A stretch of DNA of 64,000 nt from Octopus sinensis (lineage: Eukaryota): NCBI RefSeq assembly GCF_006345805.1, contig NC_042999.1, positions 5,518,001 through 5,582,000 on the forward strand, read 5' to 3'. The notes below the pieces were generated by a model. That model saw nothing but the letters and a program-made list of their open reading frames with translations, was not told where the DNA came from and searched no databases. A program made the translations under genes and the position numbers. Positions 13,204 through 58,555 of this stretch are shown here, piece by piece. Each line of letters starts with the position of its first letter. Position 1 is the first letter of the stretch.

Positions 13204-13830
13204 ATGGCATCAGGAATAACGGAAGAACAGGCCATGCTGAATGACTTCTACCTGAGACAACTTAACCTGCCCGATGCGCTTACATTGGATAATATCATTG
13301 AGAACTTTTCTATGCTAAATTTAGCGTTTCCTTCAGATGTCTGTGAGGTGTGCTGCAGTAATTCTACCTCTGTTCACTACCGGCCATGCTGCAATTACCT
13401 GGTCTGTTCTTCGTGCTTAACACGTTACCTGTCTGAGAAGGTTCAGTTAGGAATTGTCAACATAAAATGTCTTAACACCTGTGAGCATTACATTAACCAG
13501 GACGATATCATGGCTTACTTACCATCATCTCTGAAAGAGAGATTCAACAAGTTTCTTGTTGATGCCAATAAGGATCCTTGTGTGAAAACCTGTCCAAACT
13601 GTTGTTCCATTATCTCGATTGACAAATCTGAAATGAAGCATAAAAAATGGAAAAAAGGTTTAAAGGTCGTTTGTTCCACCTGTTCAACTGCGATATGCTT
13701 CCCTTGTCAAGCACAATGGCACGAAGGAATTACTTGCAAACAATTCCGGAAAGGAGACAAAATGGTCAAATTTTGGGCTAAAAATTACCAAAATGGTCAG
13801 CTTAATGCACAACGATGTCCAAAATGCAAG
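13204..13830 (+). CDS. RNF217: RBR E3 ubiquitin ligase RNF217-like, coding exon 1 (RING1, IBR, start of RING2)
   Basis: Acceptor tttattacag at 13201, then ccATGG. Translation CEVCC...RPCCNYLVCSSCL...VQLGIVNIKC, CPNC...CSTC...CFPCQAQWHEGITC...KGDK...NAQRCPKCK closely matches vertebrate RNF217 as recalled (VQLGQVEIKC, WHEGVNC, KGDK, NAQKCPKCK). Donor aag|gtagga, phase 0. An upstream coding exon cannot be excluded. Confidence 0.93.
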
Positions 13831-16564: not shown

Positions 16565-16766
16565 ATTTTCATCCAACGTTCCACTGGCTGTGATCAAATG
16601 TCTTGTAAGAAGTGTGATACCAATTTCTGCTATCTTTGTGGAGATAAATTTCGTGGAATTAAATTTTTTGGTGATCATTTTAGCAAATTAAGTGTATTTG
16701 GTTGCAAATACCATTTCCTTCCACAGAAAAATATTGCCAGGAAATTGATTCGAGGAACTTTATTTG
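16565..16766 (+). CDS. RNF217: RNF217-like coding exon 2 (RING2)
   Basis: ttttttcag|ATT; IFIQRSTGCDQMSCKKCDTNFCYLCGDKFRGIKFFGDHFSKLSVFGCKY...IRGTLF; donor g|gtaagt; 202 nt, phase 0 to 1. Confidence 0.95.
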
Positions 16767-18332: not shown

Positions 18333-18813
18333 TTAAACCTTTCGTTACTGTATTTATTTTGCGATGCTCTGTTTCTTTCAATTAATTTTAAATATAACAA
18401 AGAATTTAGTAAGATAACTTAGTTATCATTCAGCTAGTGTTAGGAACATAAATTGTGACTCAGGTTTGGTGGAAGATTTTAATACAAAACTTATAAAAAC
18501 AAGACATTTGTACTACGGAGCGAAAGACTGTTTCAGGTAGGCTGGTAAGAACAGGGTTAAGAATTGTTTCTCTATTATATATTTTAACCCTTTTCTTACC
18601 ATATTTCTGTTGAGATTCTCTTTGTTTCTTTCAATTAATTTTAAATATAACAAAGAATTTAGTAAAATAACTTAGTTATCATTAAGCTAGTGTTAGGAAC
18701 ATAAATTGTGACTAAGGTTTGGTGGAAGATTTTAATGCAAAATTTATGGAAACAAGACATTTATACTACAGAGCCAGAACTGGTTTCAGCCGGATTGGTA
18801 TCAAAAAGGTTAA
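18333..18813. mobile_element. Tandem pair of piggyBac-type MITEs (about 230 bp each); further copies at 29410-29610 (partial), 32994-33201, 50760-50988, 63077-63305
   Basis: TTAA-CCCTTT...AAAGGG-TTAA ends and a conserved internal sequence. Confidence 0.85.
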
Positions 18814-18913: not shown

Positions 18914-19075
18914 GTGGAAAGTTGCTGGCTTCAGTTATGCTCGGTGGCTTGGCTGTCGGGGTTGGTGGCGCTCTTGTAGGATTGGGCTCTGTCTTCCTCC
19001 CAATTTACGGAAGTGTCTGCCTCTATCGACGCTTGAAGTATCGAAGAAAGGACTTAAACAGATTCAGAACCAACT
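18914..19075 (+). CDS. RNF217: RNF217-like coding exon 3 (transmembrane segment and basic stretch); runs on to TAG at 19081-19083 if the donor is not used
   Basis: tctgcag|gt; GKLLASVMLGGLAVGVGGALVGLGSVFLPIYGSVCLYRRLKYRRK hydrophobic helix then basic cluster; donor t|gtaagt, phase 1. Confidence 0.9.
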
Positions 19076-19165
19076 GTAAGTAGACTGATTGATTTGATTG
19101 TTGTTATATCCTTATCCCTTGTGAATATTCCTGGCACTTTGCTACCATTTCTATCCTGTTGTCTC

Positions 19166-19220
<55 letters not shown>

Positions 19221-19242
<22 letters not shown>

Positions 19243-20283
19243 GTGTAGTGTTGGCGAATGTCAGGAAGCATGGAAGTTTTGAAGGATGCAGTGCTCCGAC
19301 AACTAACAACTGATGCTGGCAGTTTGTTCCATGCTTCAGCAACTCTTAGCGTGAAAAAAATGTTTCCGAAAGTCATGGAAGGAGCTGTGCTGTTTTCTGA
19401 CTTTGTAAACATGTCCACGGGTGTTAGACAGGTGGAGTTTGAAAAGGTGCTCAGAGTTATTGTTTGTAAGATGGTTAATAATTTTATGGGTGTCTGCCAA
19501 GTCAGCTGCCAGATGTCGGAGTTTCAATGTATCCATGCCCAAGGAAGCAAGGCGTTCAGAATATGGCAAATGCCTGATGGAGGGTATTCTCTTGGTTGCA
19601 CATCGCTGAACAGCTTCCAGATGATTAATATCCTGGGCAAGATAGGGGTTCCAGACCGGTGATACAAATTCCAGGTGAGGTCGCACCATAGCCATATAAA
19701 ACCTCAGATAGATAGCCGGAGAGCAACTCACAAAGGATTTGGTGAGTGATGCCAAGACACCCTCAGCCTTCTTGACAATTTTAGCGATGTGTTTTGTCCA
19801 ACGCAAATCACTATCGACAATAACACCCAGGTCACGTTCACATGAAGACTTTTTGAGACTAGTGTTGTGGAGGGAGTAGGTGGACGCTGGGTTTCTCCTC
19901 CCAAAATGCATGGTGGTACATTTGTCCACAGCCAGCTTGAGTTGCCAGTCCATGATCCACTGCTGCATTGCGTCCAGGTCTGCTTGCAATAGAGATCTAT
20001 AGTGTACAGGATCTGACCTCTTTATTTCGAGGTACAGCTTGATGTCATCTGCATATTTCAGCACTGTGGCATTCTTTAAGTTGGCATCTATGTCATTAAC
20101 ATATGCAACAAATAAAAGGGGGCCAAGAACAGATCCCTGTGGTACACCAGCACCAGATGTCATCTCATAGGGTGAAGAGTGCTGTCCTAGAACTGTGACA
20201 ACCTCTTTTCGGCCGATAATAAAGGACTTCAACCAGTTATAGAGATCGTCTCTTACACCCAACGCAGAGAGTTTTCACCATAA
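19221..20283 (-). mobile_element. 5'-truncated CR1/Jockey-group LINE reverse transcriptase fragment in the last RNF217 intron
   Basis: 308-aa ORF with GVPQGSVLGPLLF and YADD motifs; one extra T in a homopolymer shifts the final VAEAWNKLP...RQHYT* segment. Confidence 0.93.
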
Positions 20284-20509
20284 GTCATCATCATCATCCA
20301 GTTTAAATGCTAATGGTTTAAGAATTCTATGGATGGTTCTTTGTGTTTGTTTTATGTCTATTTTACCACATTCCTCCATGTTAAACAAATACATGGATTA
20401 AACAAATACAAAAAGTGAAATCTTTTTTTTTTTAATAACACTTTTTATATTAGATTTATTAATTTTTTTTTTCATTATTTAATTTTATTCTTTTATTTTT
20501 TTCCCACAG

Positions 20510-20844
20510 ATTCCAACAACAGTTTCGACGACCTCCAACTCTACTTTTCCAGAACGCACAAACTAATATTAGACGAAAACATGGACTTTATCCACAATTA
20601 CTCTTCAAAAGAAACAGATAATTCTTCAGACATAAAACTCGAAGGAATGTATAACCTGCCAGGCAGTTTGTCTCAGCTCCAAGATGATTCTGATTTTGGT
20701 CATCATATTACCCTGTCCGTCTCCGACAGTTGTGAGTCAATAGCATCAAATCCTAACACATATTTTCCTTCTGACTCTGATGACAGTTCCATTTATTCAG
20801 CCTCGTCTAGTAGAGGTCGTTTAGACTTGCCGACTAATATTTAA
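20510..20844 (+). CDS. RNF217: RNF217-like putative terminal exon 4 (Ser/Asp-rich tail)
   Basis: Long pyrimidine tract then cccacag|at; phase matches the exon 3 donor (T+AT=Tyr); open for 111 codons (YSNNSFDDLQ...GRLDLPTNI*), in frame with listed ORF 20581-20844. Confidence 0.75.
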
Positions 20845-28362: not shown

Positions 28363-30066
28363 TAAATTAATAACGGATTCAAAAATAATTTGTAGCAGAC
28401 ATCAAACACCCAACCTAAAACGAAATCAAGGTTCAAGCACCATTGATATAGAAGACTTCTGCTATCCACTGACATAGGCAATCTAGGGCCCAGCGCCATC
28501 ATTATATGTGACCTAAACTCTCTACTTACATTAAAATCTAGAAACTAGCTCCATAATATAAGGATGGCAGAAGTGCTCTTCTGACAACTTTTGAACCAGC
28601 TCCACCGATATAGTTCACCAATCCCCCAAAAGATGGCCTAAGGCTTCCACTATCATAGGCAATCTAGCCCCTACCTGCACTTAAGCTCTTGACTGTCTTT
28701 AACAACCTGGTCCCCAGCTCCATAGCTATATATATATATGACTTAAGCCCCTCAACTAACAGTGATAAATTGAGCCTCAGCTCCAGCTGATAAGGATGAC
28801 CTGAGCCCTTCCCTATCATTGTTATCATAGGCCCTAATTCCACTGATAAAGTTGTCCCAAACCCTCTTCTGACACTGACATCTTAGGTCCCAGCTGCACT
28901 GGTTTTGTAAATGAAATTCTTCTGCTTACATCGAGAAACTAGGCCTTAGATCCATGATAGATGAGCAAAGACCTTCACCTCACTTTCATATTCAAAGCCA
29001 CAGCTCCAATGACGTTGATAGCCTAAGCCTTCCTCTGGTGTTATCAACCAGGTATTTGCACCACCAACACAGATATGGATGGCATTGTAAATAGTCTTGG
29101 CAACTATACCTTGTCTCAAAGACAGAGAGTATGTTGTAGACATTTTGGGGCAACTGCTGTTGATGTGGATATCTTCCAAACCTGGTAGAGCAGAACTGAC
29201 ATGGAGATGTGTTGGTATCTTTGTCTCTTTTCTTTATCAGGTATTTAGTAGTTATCTCTTGTTCCTGGTTAGTAAAGGGCATATTTTAGGTGTGGTGTAT
29301 CTATCACAGGGCCAGGAGAGGTTACTCTTCTTGCCAATACTGTTATTCTCTAGTTTATGCTTTGCTTTTTTGCTGCTGTGATGCATGTTTCTCCTCCAAG
29401 TTTCTGTCTAACCCTTTCCTTACTGTATTTATTCTGAGATGCTTTGTGTTTCTTTCAATTAAAGAATTTAGTAAAATAACTCAGTTATTATTAAGCTAGT
29501 GTTAGGAACATAAATTGTGACTAAGGTTTGGTGGAAGATTTTAATTCAAAATTTATGAAAACAAGACATTTTTACTACAGAGCCAGAGGCAGTTTCAGCT
29601 GGGTTGGTATCGATACCAACCCAGCTGATTCTTTTGCACTCAGTCACTCACTTTCTCTCTCACTCAATCCCTCTCTCACCGATTCTTTTGCACTCACTCC
29701 CTCTCTCACCTACCCTCACTTAACCACTTCCTCAAACAAACTCTCAGACATTAAATAATGATGGTATTTGTTCACCCTCTTAATAATGCCATTCATTAGC
29801 TGAAGTCATCATCATCGTTTAACGTCCGTTTTCCGCGCTTGCACGGGTTGGACAGTTCGACCGGGGTCTGGGAAGCCAGGAGGCTGCACCAGGCTCCAGT
29901 CTGATCTGGCAGTGTTTCTACAGCTGGATGCCCTTCCTAATGCCAACCACTCCGTGAGTGTAGTGGGTGCTTTTTACGTGCCACCGGCACGGAAGCCAGT
30001 CGAGGTGGCGCTGGCATCAGCCATGTACAGATGGTGGATTTTACATGCCACCGGCACAGGTATCGC

Positions 30067-30752
30067 AACAACAATCAAATCAATCAGTCTACTTACAGTT
30101 GGTTCTGAATCTATTTAAGTCCTTTCTTCGATACTTCAAGCGTCGATAGAGGCAGACACTTCTGTAAATTGGGAGAAAGACAGAGTCCAATCCTACAAGA
30201 GCGCCACCAACCCCGACAGCCAAGCTACCGAGCATAACTGACATTCATAAGATCTGGTCATCAAATCTAAGTAGAGACTTCAAATTTGAAATCTTCAAAG
30301 CCACAGTCAAACCAATTCTACTATATGGCTCAGAAACCTGGACGTTATCAAAGAAGCTTGAGGGGCGGTTGGATGGAACCTACACTCGCCTGCTTATGAG
30401 AGCTCAAAATCTCTCGTGGAAGCGCCATCCAACCAAAATGCAAATATATGGGAAACTACCACCTGTGTCATCTCTTGTGAAAGGTAGAAGAGTCCAGTTT
30501 GCTGGAAATTGTTGTAGAGCTGAAAAAGAGGTAATTTCTACTGTTCTCCTCTGGAAGCCATCTGCTCACGATACCAGAGGGCGCACACTCTCCTACCCTG
30601 ATGTAATCTCCAGGGATACAGGCATCCAGCAACAGGACCTCCGTAATGCCATGATGGACCATGAAGTCTGGCGTAACATAGTAAATTCCATTGTCTCGAC
30701 CACGGTCGAACAATGATGATGATGAAGCATAACTGAAGCCAGCAACTTTCCA
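30067..30752 (-). pseudogene. Inverted partial duplicate of RNF217 exon 3 plus about 30 nt of downstream sequence, interrupted by an RTE LINE
   Basis: 30067-30241 is the reverse complement of 18931-19105 with 5 transitions; 30737-30752 is the reverse complement of 18915-18930. Confidence 0.95.
30242..30725 (+). mobile_element. 5'-truncated RTE-type LINE (ORF C-terminus) with (TGA)n tail and 11-bp TSD
   Basis: Reads IHKIWSSNLSRDFKFEIFKATVKPILLYGSETWTLSK...VWRNIVNSIVSTTVEQ*; TSD AGCATAACTGA at 30231-30241 and 30726-30736. Confidence 0.9.
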
Positions 30753-31475
30753 AACAATTAGAAGCAGGAAACAAAACAACAATTATAATGCATTTTTTTT
30801 TTCGTTTTTTTTTCAGAAAGATTTTCATTTGATAAACTTTATATTTACATTAATTTCTTCATTCGGCTACAGAGTCTTCTAATTAGTCATAGTTTCCCTC
30901 CCAGATATCAGAGAAAATATATCTAAATGTATTAAAATTTAATCTCAGATCTACATATAGATCAGATACACATGTATCAGACCTACATATATGTATATCA
31001 GATATCACAAAGATTTTGAAATATATGTATATATATGTATATATATATTTGAAAATGGACCTGTTGGACTGACTCTAGAAGATCAGTCCAACTTGTTTCG
31101 ACAAGCAAGGAACCGAGAATGTTTTCTAAATGAATTGACAAATGTCAGGTTTTAAATGGATAGCAAAATTAGTAAAAGCATATGTGGTCTGTCCTACTGC
31201 ACATAATCACCCAGAACATCATTAAAAGATGTAACGATCCTACAATGTTCCAATAATTCAAGTCCTTTTCTGTGTCCCTTTTTTTTTCTTTTGTCTTTCC
31301 ATTTCAATATATTTGAGGTTTTATAAAAATAGCTATATGTCTTCTTAAGCGATTCGATGACCTGGCCCAAGCAGGTGGCTCTGGAATGATACTTGCTGAC
31401 CCTTGCGGGTTACCAAGGAAGATTAGAATGATAGGAAACTGGAATCTCGGCTGATGCCTAGGCAATCGTGAAGAA

Positions 31476-31580
31476 TCAGAGATCGTCATCCCCTATTTCT
31501 TCGAATGCGTTATTTTCCAAAACACTTTGGATGTTTTGACCATCTCGTGATGCCTTGAATGAAACGTTGGCAAATTTGTC
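31476..31580 (-). CDS. SNX17: SNX17 terminal coding exon
   Basis: ttgtttcag|; DKFANVSFKASRDGQNIQSVLENNAFEEIGDDDL*, matching the conserved SNX17 C-terminus (human NFAFEGIGDEDL). Confidence 0.95.
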   Translation of the reverse strand, partial: DKFANVSFKASRDGQNIQSVLENNAFEEIGDDDL

Positions 31581-32219
31581 CTGAAACAAGATTAAAAGAA
31601 ACAAAGATGTAACCAATGATCAACAAAAGGGTGCAACATGATTTCTAACATGAAACACAAGAAAACTGTCATTGGGGAATAATAAGACAATTATTTGACG
31701 ACTGGCTCCCATGCCAACCTCCCTTCATTGGACACTAAACTCTGCTTGCGAAGACCTGTTGGGGCAAGTGAAATCGAAATTGAACCAAATCCTATGACTG
31801 GCACCCGGCCGTTGGACTGACGCCTGTGCAAGTGGCAAGTAAAAAAAACACTGTTTCAACCCTGTGCTTAAGGAGACCTATTGAGTCAAGTACATCAACA
31901 TCAAAAATCAATGGAAATTGTAGTTGTGATCCCTGTGCCGGTGGCACGTAAAAAGCACCAACCGATTGTGGCTGTTGCCAGCCTCACCTGGCACCTGTGC
32001 CGGTGGAACGTAAAAAGCACCCACTACACTCATAGAATGGTTGGCGTTAGAAATGGCATCCAGCTGTAGAAACACTGCCAGATCAGACTGGAGCCTGGTG
32101 CAGCCTCCTGGCTTCCCAGACCCCAGTTGAACCATCCAACCCATGCTAGCATGGAGAACGGACGATGATGATGATGATTTGACTGAAAAACATCATTAGT
32201 TGACTAACGAGTGATACAA

Positions 32220-32443: not shown

Positions 32444-33394
32444 TGACATCCAGTTATTGGATCAAAACAGGAAACTCTAGGATATAGCAAAGGGAGGATG
32501 GTACGGTCAGATCTGAAAGCCTCACAGTTGTGCAAACCTCTCCAACCCACATGGATGCTAAAACAATGATAACTGGAAGCTAAACTAACCTCTCTGTGTT
32601 TTTCACATCATAAAGGGTATCCAACTGTAGAAACCTCGCTAGATCAGATTGGAGCCTGGTGCAACCTCCTGGCTCGCCAGTCCTCAGTCAAACCGTCCAA
32701 CCCATGCCAGCATGGAAAGTGGAAGTTAAACAATGATGATGATGATGATGATGATGATGAAGGCAACAAGCTGGCAGACTCATTAGCATGCTGGGCAAAA
32801 TGTTTAGCTGCAGTTTGTCTGTCTTCATGCTTTGAGGTTGACTTTTGCCTTTCATCCTTTCAGAGTTGATAAAATGAGTGCCAGTCGAGTGCTGGGGCTG
32901 ATACTATCAACTCACACCCTTCCCCAAATTGCTGGCTTTGAGCCAAAATCTGACACCATCATTAACTTTGTTGTTATTATCAACATGGCTTTCTTAACCC
33001 TTTCGTTACCATATTTCTGTTGAGATGTTTCTTTCAATTAATTTTAAATATAACAAAGAATTTAGTAAAATAACTTAGTTATCATTAAGCTAGTGTTGGG
33101 AACATTAATTGTGGCTAAGGTTTGGTGGAAGATTTTAATTCAAAACATTTGCACAACAGAGCCAGAGCTGGTTCCAGCCGGGTTGGTGTCAAAAGGGTTA
33201 AGATAGTTTTATAAATATTGCTTTTAATCCAAACTCAGTTGTCTATTATTTTTTGTGATTTGTGATGAAGTCTTGTTACAATACTCAAGCGATGTCTGTT
33301 TGTTTTTTTATCATTGTTATATAACCAGAGAGTAGCAATAGTAGTTAATATTTACATAAACATGAACACAGCACATTTGTTCTTTCTTATAGAA

Positions 33395-40646: not shown

Positions 40647-40678
<32 letters not shown>

Positions 40679-41689
40679 CCTTTCTACTAAAGGCTTGAAA
40701 TTCACAAGTCCTTTTAGAGTTAGCTGCCCTTAACATTAATTGGTCTTCTTTGAATAAAGAAAAACTTATTGAGTCAAGCAGATTAAGGCAAGCATAACAA
40801 CAGTGGAAGGGCATAAAATACTGGCTAGCATTAAGTTTAAGACTCAGCACATAGACTCTATGACCACTTCATTACTACTACTACTACTGCTACTACTACT
40901 ACATAAAATAACAACAAAAATGCTATTTATAACACTGTGCTAAACTGGCATAATAAATAAAATATTGAAGATATTTGTAAATCCATGCTGTTATTAGACT
41001 GCAAAACAAGTAAGGCAGGTGATAAATAAAATAAAAATAATAATGTAAACCAAATAATGAAAGCAAAATATAAGATCCCTAGATTAAAATGCCACTTGCT
41101 TCAACACAAAAAAAACTGACTGAATTAAAAACCTTTTCTGAAATAAAAACATTTAAATTTATTTTAAAGCCATTTTATTTCTTCACATTCTAAACCAAAA
41201 TTAAAATTTAAAAAAAAAAGTTTTCTTCTACAGAAAGAAAAAGTTAAAATACCACTTGTCCATGCAGAAAATAAAAATATCAAAAGGCAGCTATAAAAAA
41301 CAACAAAAAACGGCTGAGGAGAGAGAAAGGAAAAGATGACATGCTAACACAATGAGGATCGCACATACTTCCAAAAGTTCAGAGTATAAATATAATCCAG
41401 CTGGCTGCAGGGAAAGAAAAAAACAAACAAAACAGTCTTGTTATTTACATAAAGTTAACGATTATTTCTACAGTGATTTCATTAAGATAAAAATTTTAAT
41501 AATTGCAGCGTGGATGGTGTTTATAAGCCATTTAAGAAACACACAAAAACCGTTAGATTCACTTCAACATTTAAATTTAATCTAAATTTGTCAAAATATT
41601 TTCGTTGCGTGAGAAGACCCGGCAAGACTAGTGAGACTATAACCCGTGGCCTCTACCTGGTATGTACCCACTCGACTTATACATACCTT

Positions 41690-42215
41690 TCCTTCTTGGG
41701 ACACAAAACTCCACTTGTGAAGACCCTTTGAGGCAAGTGAAAATCAAAATCAAACCAAATCAAATCAGATATCAGAAAGCAGAACCAAAATCGAAGTCGA
41801 TCAACGTCAATGGAAATTGCAGCTGTGATACCAGTGCTGGTGACAAGTAAGCGAACCATCCGATCGGGGCCGTTGCCAGCGCTGCCCCAACTGGCCTCCG
41901 TGCCGGTGGCACGTAAATAGCACCATCCGTTCGTGGCCGTTTCCAGCCTCGCCTGGCCCCCGTGCCGGTGGCACGTAAAAAGCACCATCCGTCCGTGGCC
42001 GTTTGCTAGCTCCGTCTGGCACCTGTGCGGGTGGCACGTAAAAAGCACCCACTACACTCACGGAGTGGTTGGTGTTAGGAAGGGCATCCAGCCGTAGAAA
42101 CACTGCCAGATCAGACTGGGCCTGATGCAGCCTTCTGACTTCACAGACCCCAGTTGAACCGTCCAACCCATGCTAGCATGGAAAGCGGACGCTAAATGAT
42201 GATGATGATGATGAG
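41690..42215 (+). mobile_element. Family-A SINE-like retroposon with (GAT)n tail and a variable internal array of about 60-bp subrepeats; about 35 copies or fragments in the window, both orientations
   Basis: Shared end ...CCATGCTAGCATGGAAAGCGGACGTTAAACGATGATGAT. Other copies include 9130-9305, 9355-9710, 10177-10670, 11895-12212, 12415-12670, 15421-15815, 24520-24735, 25250-25630, 29806-30066, 31720-32180, 34170-34560, 39560-39870, 54350-54860, 57610-58140, 60705-60990, 62340-62675. Confidence 0.9.
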
Positions 42216-44376
42216 ACAGCAACATCTTTTAATTTTGACTCTAAATCTTCAGGAGAAGTTACCTCAATCCTTTATATATTAATAATAATAATAATCCTTT
42301 CTACTAAAGGCTTGAAATTTACAAGTCCTTTTAGAGTTAGTGATGAAAATATTTTGACAAATTAAATTTAGATTAAATTTAAATGTTGAAGTGAATCTAA
42401 CGGTTTTTTGTGTGTTTCTTAAATGGCTTATAAACACCTTCCACGCTGCAATTGTTTTCGTTCCAAAACACGATCTCAGATCAAGTCACTTGCTATGCAA
42501 GTACATCTCCAAAAATTTTACTGTAATCATAAAAGTGAGTCTGTCATTAATCTGTAGAGAAATTAATCAAAGATATTTTCTAAATTTGGTCATCCCATAC
42601 TCTATCACTCTGGCACTGCTGCAATATATGTTGACACTGAAGTAAGATGAAGGGGGTTTCAGCAGAGTGACCCTTGAATGCAATTCTTCCCAGAGAGACA
42701 AATATGTTCCACCACAGGCAAGACAATGTCTCTTGGTTAACACTGAGAGAGCCAGAAAAAAAAAAGGCTCCAACACCCTTCACTTCCAGTACCAAACACG
42801 TCGAGGACAATCTCTCTCTCCTCGTGTGTGTAGACACAGGAGTGGTAAAATGCCTGCTTCCAAACCACATGGTTCCAGGTTCAGTCTCACGGCATGGCAC
42901 CTTGGGCAAGCGTCTTCTACTATAGCCTCAGGCTGACCAAAGCCTTATGAGTGGATTTGGTAGACAGAAACTGAAAGAAGTTTGTCATGTGTGTAAAATT
43001 GTGGGAATATACAGTGACAGACCCTGCTCATTAACCAACAGAAATCTATCTCTGAGCTAACAATATTATCGATATTTTCATTTTGCAATATGGGGATTAA
43101 ATCAGAAAATACTTGAACATAGCCTCAAAGCTAATGACTTCATTTATCTTAAATCAAAAAAAATCCTTGCTTCTGAACCTTATATTTTATTTCAGGGTTG
43201 TTCATTTTAAGCTTCTCTAAGCATAACACTTTGGATGTTAACGAGAGACAATACTGACAACAAGAATATGATCAGTAAATTGAGAGAAATTGTAAAGTGT
43301 CGAAGTAAGTGTTTGGAAATATTATTTTGTCTATGTTCTGAGTTCAAATCACAGCAGGGTCAACCATACCTTTCACTTTCCAGATTGAGAAAATAAGCTT
43401 TACTAATATTTTGGAATCAAGTCAATTAAGAAGCCCCTATTCGAATTGACTTTTTTTCCTACACCAGCATCCGACTAAACTAAATCCTGATACTAATTTC
43501 AGTGAGAAATTTAATATAAATTTGCGAATAACTAAGCAGCACTTCTCTTTGATATATATCCTGTGTTATTTGTAGAGTAAAACCACACATCATCATCGTC
43601 CCCGCTTTCCATGCTAGCATGGGTTGGATGATTTTGACTGAGGACTGGCAAACCAGATGGCTGCACCAGGCTCCAATCTTGATCTGGCAGAGTTTCTACA
43701 GCTGGATGCCCTTTCTAATGCCATCCACTCTGAGAGTGTAGTGGATGCTTTTTACGTGCCACCGGCACAGGGCCAGTCAGGCGGTACTGGCAATGACCTC
43801 GCTCGAATCTTTTTACACATGTCACCGGCACAGGTGCCAGTAAGGCAACGTTGGTAACGATGGCGACATTGGTCTGGAATCAATTCTGTTGAAATTCTAT
43901 ATATCATAGCAATGAGGTTTTACTGTCATACAGCGACCAGTCTTCTACACTGCTGAGTTCCAATAGAACGAAATCCAGTGACATGGACATCCTGACACCC
44001 ATGGCAGACGAATTTCAATTGGCTTCGATCTATACGTGTGATTTTATGCATCAAATGCCTACAGGATCTCTCAAGGCTAAAAACGCAGTATTCGGTATTC
44101 TAACAAGGCATCCATGTTAAGTTGGATACAAAGACTACCTTTTGATATTAATACCACTTGTGTTGTAAATAATTAACTGAAATTTAAGTAAACGAACATC
44201 ACTGTAAATGATGATTAAGAGATGCCTAATGACCTCTCATTTACAACTAAGTTAATTTGTCATACAAACTTAAAATTCTTTATCACTTTATCAAAACTTT
44301 TAGAGAGTTCCCAGATTTCTTCATCTTTATACTTTGGGAAAGACAGACAGAAAATCAAACCCCTCAAACCACTCAC

Positions 44377-48901: not shown

Positions 48902-49176
48902 GGAAGACAAGCATGACGGCCTGGTGGACAGGCATGACAGCCTGGTGGACAGGCATAGCGGACTGGTGGACAGGCATAGCGGCCTAGTGGACAGGCATGA
49001 TGGCCTGGTGGACAGGCATGACGGCCAGGTGGACAGGCATGACGGTCTGGTGGACAGGCATGAGGGCCTGGTGGACAGACATGATGGCCTGGTCAACAGA
49101 CATGATGGCCTGGTGGACAGGCATGATGGTCTGGTGGACAGGCACGACGGCCTGGTGGACAGGCATGACGGCCTGA
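48902..49176 (+). repeat. 21-bp minisatellite, 13 units (GTGGACAGGCATGACGGCCTG)
   Basis: Directly visible tandem array; no indels between units. Confidence 0.95.
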
Positions 49177-49554
49177 TGGAATGCTACAGATGGCTGATGG
49201 TGGGTGTTGTTGTAGAGAGGAGCTGAAAAAACATGGAGACTGACTGAGGAACAACACTTTAGTGGTGAAAAACTAGGTACGAGTGGGTTTCATCAAATTC
49301 GGCAAAGTTGGGGGAAATCTTCGGGACAGATGAGAATGCAGGGGTGCAATATGAAGTGGTGAAATTCATGGACTGTGAGTTGCACAAAGGTAGTTTTTGC
49401 CACCAAAATGTTCTCTTGTATAAATTGCATTTCCAATTAAATTTAACCCTGATGGTATCAGCCAACAACAAAATCCTCTCTGTCTCATCACAAACTGTGG
49501 CAGGGATTGTACAGCAGCAGCAGTAGTACCATCAATGAGAAATTATTAAAAAAA

Positions 49555-55009: not shown

Positions 55010-56988
55010 CTGTTTAAAGGTAAAATGAAATGCATTAAAGATGGTAACTAAAATTTAAAAACAGGATAGAATACGTAAGGAAACTTTCAGACCTTATTTG
55101 TTATTTTTTTTTAAATATTCATTTATTGTTTTTACTGATGTTGTCTGTATAAAATGAAACAGTATTTTAACTAGTTGTCCCAGTAAAACATATACCTATT
55201 TCTTTACTACCCACAAGGGGCGAAACACAGAGAGGGCAAACAAGGGCAGACAAACGGATTAAGTCGATTACATCGACCCCAGTGCGTAACTGGTACTTAA
55301 TTTATCGACCCCAAAAGGATGAAAGGCAAAGTCGACCTCGGCGGAATTTGAACTCAGAACGTAACGGCAGAAGAAATACCTATTTCTTTACTACCCAGGC
55401 AAAGTCGACCTTAGCGAAATTTGAACTCAGAATGTAGTGGCAGACGAAATACCGCTAAGCATTTCGCCTGGTGTGCTAACGATTCTGCCACGTTGCCACC
55501 TTAAAAACATATACCTGTGAGGTATGGGAGTAAATGCCAAGACAAATAAGGTTTTTATAAGTTTAGATATGGAATACATCCAAAGACAATAACAGCAATT
55601 ACGGCAATGATGCCAATCTATCAACTGATGAAGAATTCAAAGACTTAAATACCGAACTGTGCAAAGTTATGTTTATTGAAATGACATTCTAAATGAGATA
55701 TTTTTTAAGATGCTATTTCTTTTATTTAAGGAACCAGTTGATGTTCAAATTTACTTCAACATCCAAATAGAAAACAGAATCTTTCAGGTACTTGAGAGGG
55801 GAATGGAGCTTTATGCCAGATGATGTTGAAAGACTAAAATATGATAGAGGACAAGCACAGGCATCTTGCTATAGAGGAGATACATGGCTATCTTGCATTA
55901 TATATAAGGGCTGTGTGGTAAGTAGCTTGCTTACCAACCACATGGTTCCAGGTTCAGTCCCACTGTGTAGCACCTTGGGCAAGTGTCTTCTACTATAGCC
56001 TCGGGCCAACCAAAGCCTTGTGAGTAGATTTGGAAACTGAAAGAAGCCCATCGTATATGTGTGTGTGTATGTGTGTGTGTCTGTGTGTGTGTGTGTGTGT
56101 GTGTATGTGTGTGTGTGTATTTTTGTGTGTCTGTGTTTGTCCCCCACCCAACATTACTTGACAACCAATGTTGGTGTGTTTACATCACCGTAACTTACCA
56201 GTTCAGCAAAAGAACCCAATAGAATAAGTACTAAGCTTACAAAGAATAAGTCCTGGGGTCGATTTGCTCAATTAAAGGCAGTACTCCAGTATGGCCACAG
56301 TCAAATGAGTAAAGGGTGTGTGGGAGTCACTGGAGAGGAGATAAAAGGAAGGTGGTGATGGAGTGCCAGAGCAAACTCTTAAGGTATAAGAAGATGATTA
56401 TAAGAAAGGATGTGGACAGTGGATCGTGGGAGGGGAAGAAAGAGTAAATATTTTGATAAGAGTGTGAGGGGAAGGAGGAATAATGGATGGAGTAGAGATG
56501 GATGGAGTGAGTGATGAACAGGGGTGGGGGTGCAGATGATAAGAAATGCCAGGATGGAGTGGTGTAAGATAAGAAAAAATAGGAATGGTTCAGGAAGGAG
56601 AATAGATCAGAAAATAGCAGAATGATGGGCAAGGTATAGGAGCTGTGGAGGGGGAGATATAGAGAGGTACATTGGGGTGGAGGTGAGGTGATGATAAATG
56701 AGAGGGTGTTGAGAATGATAGCAGATAAGGGAAGTGTTGATGAATGAAGTGTAGGGCTGTGGTTGAAGGCACAGAAAGGAGGGAATTGGTAGAAATAGTG
56801 TGGGCAAGAATGATAATGAGGAAGGGGGTTCCGAGGGAAGAAGGGAGGGAGGCTGGAATCATGTTTGGAATTATGTACACATCCAGAAATAAAGAGACAC
56901 TTGAAGGAAATTAGAGGAAGAACTGATTAAAATCATTATCATCATTCCCATTTAACATTGATGTTGGTATGGATTGGATGGGTTGAGA

Positions 56989-57218
56989 GGCAAGCTGGCA
57001 GAATCGTTAGCACACCGGGCAAAATGCTTAGCGGTATTTCGTCTGCCATTACGTTCTGAGTTCAAATTCCGCCGAGGTCGACTTTGCCTTTCATCCTTTC
57101 GGGGTCAGTAAATTAAGTACCAGTTACGCACTGGGGTCGATGCAATCGACTTAATCCATTTGTCTGAACTTGTTTGTCCTCTCTGTGTTTAGCCCCTTGT
57201 GGGTAGTAAAGAAATAGG
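56989..57218 (+). mobile_element. Family-C tRNA-derived SINE with Nin/Deu-like core
   Basis: Head GAGCTGGCAGAATCGTTAG...GAGTTCAAATTCC; core GCCTTTCATCCTTTCGGGGTC..TAAA..AGTACC. Copies at about 7090-7210, 32760-32900, 40030-40420, 55200-55500. Confidence 0.8.
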
Positions 57219-58555
57219 TTTGAGAAGATCTGACAAGTCTGAATGTTGTATCATGCTCCAATGCCTGCTTTGGCCATGGTCTCCATGGCTGGATGACAAT
57301 TCCAAATGCCAAACATTTAACAGAATGTACCGAGAGCTTTTTTTGTAACACCAGTGAGGTTGCCATGTAGGTCACATGACCAAAATCTTCTTTGATTGAA
57401 TGGGGCTAGAGTGAAAAGAGGAGTTAAATTGAGAGAGAAGGGGCCAGAACAAGACAGGTTTCTTGTTGTATGGGAACTACATGGCCACTCATTATCAAAG
57501 AGAGGGTGGTAGTGGTTAGGGTGGAGCTAGAAAGAGAGATGAAATGGTAAAAATGAGGTGTTAATGTTGACTCTCAAAGAACAAAAAGGTGAATAGAGTT
57601 AATACCACTATCATCATCATAATCGTTGTCGTTTAGCATCTGCTTTCCCATGCAGGCATGGGTTGGACGGTTTGACTGAGGACTGGCAAGCCAGGAGGCT
57701 GCACAAAGTTCCAATCTGATTTGGCAGGGTTTCTACAGCTGGATGCCCTTCCTAACGCCAACCATTCCGAGAGTGTAGTGGGTGATTTTTACATGCCACC
57801 GGCACAGGAGCCAGTCAGGCAGCACTAGCATCAGTCACACTCGAATGGTGCTTTTTACATGCCATCAGCACAGGGGGCAGCCAGGCGGCACTGGCATCAG
57901 CCACACTTGAATGATGCTTTTTACATGCCACTGGCAGGGGTATCAGTTAGGTGGCACTGGCATCAGCCATGCTTGAATGGTGCATTTTATGTGCCACCAG
58001 TACAGTTACCAGTCAGATGGCACTGGCATTGGCTTGACTGCCACAGGCCACAACCACAATTTCACTTGGGTCAACAGGTCTTCACAAGCACAGCATATTA
58101 TCCAATGACTGAAAGGTATTTTTAAATGGGCCAATTATGTGAGACTGGCAAAAAAGATATTTCATCTGTTAAGACAGAATTAACATTTTGAAAAGTTGTG
58201 ATTTTGTAAAAATAACATAAAAAGCACGTAAAAAGCACTATTTGAGTGGCCCTCATGCTGGTGGCACGTACAAGCACCCACTACACTCTCAGAGTGGTTG
58301 GTGTTAGGAAGGGCATCCAGCTGTAGAAACTTTGCCAGATCAGATTGGAGTCTGGTGCAGCCATCTGGCTTACCGTCCAATCCATACCAACAGTCAAACC
58401 GTCCAATCCATACCAACATGGAAAGCGGAAGTTAAATGATGATAATGGTGATGATGATGATGAACAGTTATTAAATAGACTTTACAAAAGCTACCTCAAT
58501 GCCTTATTATGGAAGTTAAAGAATATTTGTTTTGCAAACCAAAGAAGATACTCAC

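What the first reader, a model, noticed from the sequence alone, without database searches (positions are those of the whole stretch)
30067..30752. Inverted duplicate of the RNF217 transmembrane exon 11 kb downstream, split by an RTE LINE
Seen: 191 bp of RNF217 (18915-19105) is copied in reverse orientation with 5 transitions (3 non-synonymous, 2 silent). The copy starts 1 nt into the exon, so it lacks the acceptor, and runs through the donor and TAG. A later RTE insertion with an 11-bp TSD splits it. Its other end joins a family-A SINE at a short microhomology (CAAC-ACAAT). It lies about 720 nt past the SNX17 stop, in SNX17 sense orientation. Inference: it is either a local template-switch duplication or a truncated retrocopy of a short RNF217 isoform. 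It may sit in the SNX17 3'UTR, or pair with exon 3 in RNF217 read-through RNA and mask its splice donor.
Basis: partly seen in the sequence, partly recalled or inferred. Interest (0 to 1): 0.75.

Follow-up and report, generated by a model that had tools for sequence, protein, structure and literature searches.

The report
Exon fragment co-inserted with a SINE
A 191-base piece of an octopus RNF217 gene was copied backwards 11 kb downstream, apparently in the same event that inserted a SINE there; it is a real but probably functionless by-product of retrotransposition.

Summary
Window 18915-19105 (RNF217 transmembrane exon minus its first base, plus 30 nt of the next intron) recurs inverted at 30067-30241 and 30737-30752. 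There are five differences, all transitions. A 484-nt LINE 3' fragment with an 11-bp target-site duplication splits the copy.

The new evidence is the orthologous Octopus bimaculoides locus, which is an empty site. The SINE (29810-30066), the exon copy and the LINE fragment are all missing there, and the flanks abut with no target-site duplication and about 2 nt lost.

The SINE is 5'-truncated and has the same orientation as the copy. It joins the copy across a 9-nt microhomology. No near-identical SINE donor lies in the window.

The best reading is one aberrant SINE retrotransposition event. The growing cDNA switched at the microhomology onto the sense strand of RNF217, either unspliced RNA or DNA, copied 191 nt, and was end-joined to the target.

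With the outgroup, three changes fall in the copy and two in the gene itself, one of them Ser-to-Gly. The event happened about a fifth to a quarter of the way back to the O. bimaculoides split.

It is not a processed retrocopy. A role in the SNX17 3'UTR or as a dsRNA partner is untested and unlikely. Interest is low to moderate.

The parts
18914..19075 (+). RNF217 exon 3 (transmembrane helix exon), the source gene segment
   Evidence: Acceptor AG at 18912-13, donor GT at 19076-77. The translation GKLLASVMLGGLAVGVGGALVGLGSVFLPIYGSVCLYRRLKYRRKDLNRFRTN matches O. bimaculoides RNF217 aa 278-332.
18915..19105 (+). Exact source interval that was copied: exon 3 minus its first base, plus 30 nt of intron 3 including the donor and the in-frame TAG
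29810..30066 (-). 5'-truncated SINE with its (TCA)n tail at the left end. Tail and flank overlap in TCAT at 29806-29809.
   Evidence: About 25 family copies lie in the window. Four other copies in the window and L001 carry at least 35-60 nt more 5' head. The element is absent from the O. bimaculoides empty site. The best paralogue in the window is only 89% identical.
30067..30075 (-). Junction microhomology ATTGTTGTT, shared by RNF217 intron 3 (9/9) and the SINE head (ATTGTAGTT, 8/9)
   Evidence: The chance of 8/9 or better at a fixed register is about 1e-4.
30067..30241 (-). Inverted copy, arm 1 (= source 19105-18931)
   Evidence: 175 nt, 97%.
30231..30241 (.). Left copy of the 11-bp target-site duplication AGCATAACTGA of the later LINE insertion
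30242..30725 (+). Later insertion: 484-nt 3' fragment of a non-LTR retrotransposon (RTE-like), tail GATGATGATGA, with an open 157-codon C-terminal ORF (30243-30713)
   Evidence: It has no other copy in the window or in L001.
30726..30736 (.). Right copy of the 11-bp TSD
30737..30752 (-). Inverted copy, arm 2 (= source 18930-18915). The far junction to target DNA shares 1 nt (A).
30753..31475 (-). Pre-existing DNA downstream of the SNX17 stop, orthologous to O. bimaculoides L001 28460 onward (about 90-96% identical). It contains a conserved ATTAAA at 30943-30938.
31476..31619 (-). SNX17 last coding exon and TGA stop (31476-31478)
   Evidence: The L001 gene call carries PX and SNX17 FERM domains. 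The best named hit is sorting nexin-17-like.

Best explanation
A single aberrant retrotransposition event in this octopus lineage, after its split from O. bimaculoides, produced a two-part insertion.

Proposed steps:
1. A LINE (RTE-type) enzyme nicked the plus strand after ...GCTGAAGTCAT and primed reverse transcription on the (GAUGA)n tail of a SINE RNA.
2. About 257 nt into the SINE, inside its 5' head, the 3' end of the growing cDNA left the SINE template. It re-annealed through a 9-nt microhomology (ATTGTTGTT) to the sense strand of RNF217, 30 nt into intron 3 and only 11 kb away.
3. It was extended for 191 nt, through the donor and back to the second base of exon 3.
4. It was then end-joined to the other side of the break with 1 nt of overlap, no target-site duplication and about 2 nt of target lost.
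5. Later, an RTE-like LINE fragment inserted into the copy with a normal 11-bp TSD.

Shown: the anatomy, the empty site, the junction sequences and the relative age. Inferred: that it was one event, and the nature of the second template. That template was either unspliced or nascent RNF217 RNA, or the displaced sense DNA strand. I lean slightly to RNA. The copy itself most likely does nothing.
For: - Empty site in O. bimaculoides: window 29659-29809 = L001 28307-28457 and window 30752-31693 = L001 28460-29384. SINE, copy and LINE fragment are all absent, and the flanks read GCTGAAGTCAT-TT-AAACAATTAG.
- Neither the SINE alone nor the whole block has a TSD.
- SINE and copy have the same orientation and are fused directly. 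The SINE is 5'-truncated within its head.
- The junction has 9 nt of microhomology.
- The SINE tail abuts a TCAT in the target. No near-identical SINE donor lies within 64 kb (best 89%). So the SINE part came from RNA made elsewhere, not from local DNA copying.
- The template was the sense strand. An RNA template requires this; a DNA template would give it only half the time.
- The 30 nt of intron and the intact donor fit unspliced RNA or DNA.
- Age: 19 sites have source = copy but differ from O. bimaculoides, against 3 copy-derived and 2 source-derived changes. The event is therefore much younger than the species split.
- Precedents: LINE template-switch chimeras (PMC2104539) and class-2 templated sequence insertions with no TSD, no poly(A), microhomology and microdeletion (PMC5110952).
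Against: - There is only one outgroup, so 'one event' is a parsimony argument and was not observed.
- Classical template-switch chimeras carry a full-length 5' RNA and a TSD (PMC2104539). Both are absent here.
- RNA templates would normally come from anywhere in the genome. An 11-kb cis donor favours a DNA template or requires tethered nascent RNA.
- The copy's end 1-2 nt inside the exon boundary is explained by neither template.
- The partnership between the SINE and an RTE-type LINE rests only on the shared GATGA tail.
Confidence: 0.62

Rival explanations
1. Two independent events at one site. Either a SINE inserted first and a later break at its 5' end was patched with a locally templated inverted copy of exon 3, or the patch came first and the SINE landed exactly at its edge.
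For: The single outgroup cannot order the events. Break repair with templated patches is known (PMC5110952).
Against: This needs two rare events at the same nucleotide. It also needs loss of the SINE's own TSD and truncation of the SINE exactly at a 9-nt match to the donor.
Confidence: 0.15
2. 5' transduction. A now-lost, polymorphic SINE once sat in RNF217 intron 3 at 19105/19106. Read-through RNF217 pre-mRNA carrying exon 3, 30 nt of intron and the SINE was then reverse transcribed from the SINE tail and inserted here.
For: The parts have the same orientation and are fused directly. Intron sequence is retained. Microhomology at the 5' junction is usual for truncated insertions (reference list of PMC2912911).
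Against: The source locus is colinear with O. bimaculoides through 19105, with no trace of a SINE. The model requires a lost allele. It does not explain the 11-kb proximity or the missing TSD.
Confidence: 0.07
3. The copy is a maintained functional element. It could be part of the SNX17 3'UTR, bringing a strong 5' splice site. Or it could be a dsRNA partner for exon 3 in RNF217 read-through RNA, driving ADAR editing or masking the donor.
For: - In a plus-strand RNA the 175-nt arms would pair at -335 kcal/mol, and 3 of the 5 mismatches become G.U pairs.
- The flanks downstream of SNX17 are about 90-96% identical to O. bimaculoides, against about 85-90% for most aligned non-coding stretches.
- The gene itself has acquired an A>G (Ser>Gly) change since the duplication.
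Against: - Three of three copy-derived changes are unconstrained: two are non-synonymous in the old frame.
- The copy tolerated a 484-nt insertion.
- A conserved ATTAAA precedes it on the SNX17 strand, and 16 poly(A) hexamers separate it from the RNF217 stop.
- The copy shows no excess of A>G changes.
- No transcript data could be reached. The 51-aa ORF in the copy is not on record in the gene-position collection.
Confidence: 0.05
4. An assembly artefact: a mis-join or a collapsed read.
For: None specific. The repeat-rich context invites caution.
Against: The copy differs from the source at 5 sites, two of which keep the ancestral state. A later insertion with a perfect TSD interrupts it. Both flanks are orthologous to one contiguous O. 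bimaculoides site.
Confidence: 0.01

Closest known systems
LINE-mediated template-switch chimeric retrogenes (U6-L1 in mammals, WEIRD-MGL / Mg-SINE in Magnaporthe; PMC2104539)
   Same: There are two unrelated sequences fused directly in the same transcriptional orientation. The 3' part is a 5'-truncated retroelement ending in its tail at the target nick. The 5' part was copied after a switch of template during first-strand synthesis.
   Different: The 5' part is a 191-nt internal fragment (exon plus intron), not a full-length RNA. There are no flanking direct repeats. The switch used a 9-nt microhomology. The donor lies 11 kb away in cis. The enzyme is presumably RTE-type rather than L1 or MGL.
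Class 2 templated sequence insertions at double-strand breaks (Onozawa & Aplan; PMC5110952)
   Same: No TSD, no poly(A), microhomology and microdeletion at the junctions, and an intact donor locus. Intronic sequence is allowed.
   Different: Those patches come from distant loci and stand alone. Here the patch is fused to a SINE that shows the marks of target-primed insertion, and the donor is a neighbour.
Replication-based microhomology-mediated template switching (FoSTeS/MMBIR) giving short inverted local duplications (from general knowledge)
   Same: The template lies within about 10 kb in cis. The orientation is inverted. There is microhomology at the switch point. The segment is short.
   Different: One flank of the templated piece is a retrotransposed SINE with no local donor. 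So the invading 3' end was a cDNA, not a stalled replication strand.
Processed retrocopy (retropseudogene) of RNF217
   Same: It is a gene fragment copied elsewhere while the parent stays intact.
   Different: It retains intron sequence, and has no splice junction, no poly(A) and no TSD.

Membership tests
Template-switch chimeric retrogene (features as listed in PMC2104539) | The 5' part is a full-length copy of a cellular RNA | tested here: not met
   The copy covers only 18915-19105: exon 3 minus 1 nt, plus 30 nt of intron 3. There is no exon 2 sequence and no other exon.
Template-switch chimeric retrogene (features as listed in PMC2104539) | The 3' part is a 5'-truncated retroelement | tested here: met
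   The SINE lacks at least 35-60 nt of the head that four other copies carry.
Template-switch chimeric retrogene (features as listed in PMC2104539) | Both parts are joined directly in the same transcriptional orientation | tested here: met
   Both are sense on the minus strand, with no filler and a 9-nt overlap.
Template-switch chimeric retrogene (features as listed in PMC2104539) | The chimera is flanked by short direct repeats (TSD) | tested here: not met
   The empty site GCTGAAGTCAT-TT-AAACAATTAG shows no duplication and about 2 nt lost.
Class 2 templated sequence insertion (PMC5110952) | No TSD, no poly(A) tract, no cryptic poly(A) signal at the end of the insert | tested here: met
Class 2 templated sequence insertion (PMC5110952) | End-joining marks at the junctions (microhomology, microdeletion) | tested here: met
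   9-nt and 1-nt overlaps, and about 2 nt lost.
Class 2 templated sequence insertion (PMC5110952) | The donor is intact and the insert is derived from RNA of a distant region | tested here: inconclusive
   The donor is intact but lies only 11 kb away. RNA versus DNA origin cannot be read from the sequence.
Processed retrocopy | Introns removed, poly(A) tail, TSD | tested here: not met
   The intron 3 donor and 30 nt of intron are retained. There is no poly(A) and no TSD.
MMBIR/FoSTeS local inverted duplication | Microhomology at the breakpoints and a nearby cis template | tested here: met
MMBIR/FoSTeS local inverted duplication | All templated pieces are copied from DNA by a replicative or repair polymerase | not testable with these tools
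   The SINE piece has no donor of 90% identity or better in the window, which argues against an all-DNA origin. The polymerase and the template type cannot be determined.
RNF217 (RBR E3 ligase with a C-terminal TM helix): identity of the source gene | RING1-IBR-RING2 architecture followed by a TM segment, and orthology to annotated RNF217 | tested here: met
   91% identity over 100% of the query to O. bimaculoides RNF217 (IBR, IBR_1 Pfam). The arthropod RNF217 hits listed are 45-50% identical.
RTE-clade LINE: the 484-nt insert | RTE-type apurinic endonuclease and RT domains; short-repeat 3' tail | tested here: inconclusive
   Only the C-terminal 157 codons are present. Pfam gives a sub-threshold DUF6451 hit. 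The tail is GATGATGATGA. The clade was not shown.

The most novel reading that the evidence does not exclude
During SINE integration, the LINE reverse transcriptase captured nascent, unspliced RNA of the neighbouring gene. This would be a cis-proximal, RNA-mediated route. It would move an exon together with its splice donor into a neighbour's 3' region. If it is common in SINE-rich cephalopod genomes, it would be an unrecognised source of exon shuffling and of long inverted exon duplexes that ADAR could act on.
Probability: 0.2. Interest if true: 0.55.

Novelty: new member of a known kind. Interest (0 to 1): 0.3.

Why it matters
This is a clean, datable example, with its empty site in hand. 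It shows that retrotransposition intermediates in an octopus can pick up a piece of a neighbouring gene: a coding exon with its splice donor. The junctions are well enough preserved to read the mechanism: a microhomology switch, no TSD and a small target deletion.

If a genome-wide census showed many such SINE-linked patches, it would bear on two questions. One is how TE-rich cephalopod genomes shuffle exons. The other is how they create inverted exon repeats that could feed their heavy RNA editing.

As a single locus with no sign of constraint, it is mainly a mechanistic curiosity and a caution about read mis-mapping between the two copies.

Tried and rejected
- Homology beyond the ends. The left flank of the SINE does not continue RNF217 intron 3, so the SINE did not split a longer copy. 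The right flank is not exon 2 or intron 2; it is orthologous target DNA.
- TSD for the SINE alone or for the whole block: none.
- Local DNA donor for the SINE part: the best paralogue is 89% identical.
- ADAR footprint in the copy (excess A>G): none. The copy-derived changes are G>A, C>T and G>A.
- More octopus species. Two SNX17 protein searches returned no octopus SNX17. The exon 1 read-through ORF and the 51-aa ORF in the copy are not on record.
- One metagenome scan with a conserved 19-mer gave six contigs with no further similarity, so these are chance matches.
- Pfam on the LINE fragment gave no clade.
- Other high-identity two-copy repeats in the window. Only a pair around 40.6-42.5 kb turned up. 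It looks like inverted ends of an element around a SINE and was not pursued.
- Species of the window: not identified. It is an Octopus relative, about 84-92% identical in nucleotides to O. bimaculoides across the long aligned stretches of this locus.

Full report
**1. What is there**

The window carries two convergent genes.

RNF217 is on the plus strand:
- Exon 1 is 13204-13830, exon 2 is 16565-16766, exon 3 is 18914-19075, and the last exon runs from 20510 to the TAA at 20842.
- The spliced product of the first three exons is 91% identical over its full length to O. bimaculoides RNF217 (P0001).

SNX17 is on the minus strand:
- Its last coding exon ends ...EEIGDDDL, followed by TGA at 31476-31478.
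- The orthologous O. bimaculoides gene call carries PX and SNX17 FERM domains. The best named protein hit is sorting nexin-17-like.

Exon 3 encodes the transmembrane helix. It has a consensus donor (ACT|GTAAGT). If the donor is not used, the frame reads CK and stops at TAG 19081-83.

**2. The observation**

- The repeat finder gives 18931-19105 against 30067-30241: 175 nt, 97% complementary.
- BLAST adds 18915-18941 against 30752-30726 at 100%.
- Between the two arms lies a 484-nt insert (30242-30725). It ends in GATGATGATGA and is flanked by a perfect 11-bp duplication, AGCATAACTGA (30231-41 and 30726-36).
- The insert keeps an open 157-codon C-terminal ORF. Pfam does not place it in a clade, so 'RTE' remains a reasonable label only.
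- With the insert removed, the copy is 191 nt, gapless, and has five transitions.
- It is the highest-identity two-copy repeat in the window.
- It starts at the second base of exon 3 and runs 30 nt into intron 3.

**3. The key new evidence: an empty site**

The O. bimaculoides locus (L001, CM046603.1) covers RNF217, the intergenic region and the 3' end of SNX17.
- Window 29659-29809 aligns to L001 28307-28457 at 94%.
- Window 30752-31693 aligns to L001 28460-29384 at 92%.
- At the nucleotide level, O. bimaculoides reads ...GCTGAAGTCAT TT AAACAATTAGAAG...
- The window reads ...GCTGAAGTCAT | CATCATCG...[SINE][exon copy with LINE insert]...CAACTTTCC | AAACAATTAGAAG....

So the SINE, the exon fragment and the LINE fragment are all lineage-specific. 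They sit in one gap. There is no target-site duplication around the SINE or around the whole block, and about 2 nt of target are missing.

**4. Anatomy of the block**

- The SINE belongs to a family with about 25 copies in the window.
- Here it lies on the minus strand. Its (GATGA)n tail is at the left edge, overlapping a TCAT in the target.
- It is 5'-truncated. Four other copies carry a further head...TCAATGGAAATTGTAG(T/C)TG(T/A)GAT(C/A)CC....
- Read on the minus strand, the junction is RNF217 ...GATTTGATTGTTGTT|GCGATACCTGTGCCGG... SINE.
- ATTGTTGTT matches intron 3 at 9 of 9 positions and the SINE head at 8 of 9. By chance that happens about 1 time in 10,000 at a fixed register.
- The exon fragment and the SINE have the same orientation.
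- No SINE copy in the 64 kb is more than 89% identical to this one. The SINE part was therefore not copied from nearby DNA; it came in as a retrotransposed RNA.

**5. Mechanism**

The simplest account is one target-primed reverse transcription event that went wrong at its 5' end.
- The plus-strand 3'-OH at ...GTCAT primed on the SINE tail.
- After about 257 nt, the cDNA end left the SINE RNA inside its head.
- It annealed by the 9-nt match to the sense strand of RNF217 at 19097-19105 and was extended to 18915.
- It was then joined to the other side of the break with a 1-nt overlap and a small target loss.

A Y-shaped or broken intermediate healed by microhomology-mediated joining is a recognised fate of LINE intermediates (PMC2912911). 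Template-switch chimeras (PMC2104539) and TSD-less, poly(A)-less 'class 2' templated patches (PMC5110952) are both documented.

This case sits between those two kinds.
- Like a chimera, it has a 5'-truncated retroelement at the 3' side, and the parts share orientation and are fused directly.
- Unlike a chimera, it lacks the full-length 5' RNA and the TSD.
- Like a class-2 patch, it has end-joining junctions. Unlike one, it is fused to a SINE and comes from a neighbour.

**6. RNA or DNA as the second template**

The sequence cannot decide.
- For RNA: a reverse transcriptase was extending that very 3' end. The templated strand is the sense strand, which RNA requires and DNA gives only half the time. 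Intron retention fits nascent pre-mRNA.
- For DNA: the donor is 11 kb away in cis, which a random cellular RNA would almost never be. Tethered nascent RNA of the neighbouring gene would also be local.
- The end point 1-2 nt inside the exon boundary is unexplained by either template. The right flank is orthologous target DNA, not exon 2 or intron 2.

I lean slightly to RNA.

**7. Age and direction of change**

In the three-way alignment, 19 sites have gene = copy but differ from O. bimaculoides. Three changes are copy-derived (18986 G>A, 18996 C>T, 19009 G>A at a CpG). Two are gene-derived (18946 A>G, which gives Ser>Gly, and 19059 T>C, silent).

So the event is about a fifth to a quarter as old as the split from O. 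bimaculoides. There is no excess of A>G in the copy, so no editing footprint. All-transition differences are not remarkable with five sites.

**8. Function**

There is no sign of constraint: two of the three copy-derived changes would be non-synonymous, and a 484-nt insertion was tolerated.
- On the SNX17 strand, a conserved ATTAAA (30943-30938) comes before the copy. The next AATAAA is at 29433-29428.
- Flank identity to O. bimaculoides is somewhat raised, about 90-96% against about 85-90% for most aligned non-coding stretches. A long 3'UTR that includes the copy is therefore possible but unproven.
- On the RNF217 strand, 16 poly(A) hexamers lie between the stop and the copy.
- If one RNA did span both arms, they would pair at -335 kcal/mol, with 3 of the 5 mismatches as G.U pairs.
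- In SNX17 RNA the copy is in the sense orientation, so it could not pair with RNF217 mRNA.

No transcript data could be reached.

**9. Rivals**

- Two separate events at one nucleotide: possible, but unparsimonious.
- 5' transduction from a lost SINE in intron 3: there is no trace at the source locus in either species.
- A maintained regulatory element: untested, and weak.
- An assembly artefact: excluded in practice by the five differences, the nested TSD-bearing insert and the orthologous flanks.

**10. Verdict**

This is a real, lineage-specific, SINE-linked templated copy of an exon fragment. It is a new example of a known kind of retrotransposition accident and is probably neutral. Interest is low to moderate. 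It would rise if a census showed that such cis-proximal captures are common in cephalopods.

Noticed in passing
window 19230-20298, compared with L001 16937-19347: O. bimaculoides RNF217 exon 4 (L001 17729-17806, PMELREVDFDFAQMDALSVTNPHLFQ) has no counterpart in the window. About 2.4 kb of O. bimaculoides sequence is replaced by a (CT)n tract plus a LINE reverse-transcriptase fragment on the minus strand (RVT_1, E = 8e-18). Splicing exon 3 to the last exon keeps the frame and gives a 441-aa product.
   Followed up: partly
window 18946: Since the duplication, the functional RNF217 gene itself changed A>G (Ser>Gly) in the TM helix. The pseudo-copy and O. bimaculoides keep Ser.
   Followed up: partly
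window 18334-18547, 18585-18813, 29409-29611, 32994-33201: An unnamed repeat family of about 220 nt. Two tandem copies lie just upstream of RNF217 exon 3, and further direct copies lie near the insertion site and inside SNX17. It is not part of the inverted duplication.
   Followed up: partly
window 30092-30244 (minus strand): The copy carries a 51-codon ORF (MSVMLGS...TNCK*). Its ATG is created by the 5' junction of the later LINE insertion. No gene with this product is on record in the gene-position collection.
   Followed up: yes
window 41498-41603 / 42345-42456 and 40659-40723 / 42276-42340: A 93% inverted pair flanks a SINE (41816-42215), and a 97% direct 65-nt pair lies nearby. These may be terminal inverted repeats of a DNA element or another local patchwork.
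   Followed up: partly
window 48906-49180: A 21-nt minisatellite (13 copies, 87% matches, unit GACAGGCATGACGGCCTGGTG) lies inside an SNX17 intron. It reads as long Pro/His/Cys-rich pseudo-ORFs on both strands.
   Followed up: partly
window 29613-29659, compared with L001 26052-28307: O. bimaculoides carries about 2.2 kb of extra sequence here, including SINE copies, about 150 nt to the left of the insertion site. The SNX17 downstream region has therefore been hit repeatedly in both lineages.
   Followed up: no
window 56000-58000: Strong GC skew (+0.32) and a 199-codon low-complexity Ser/Pro/Leu-rich ORF on the minus strand (56330-56926).
   Followed up: no
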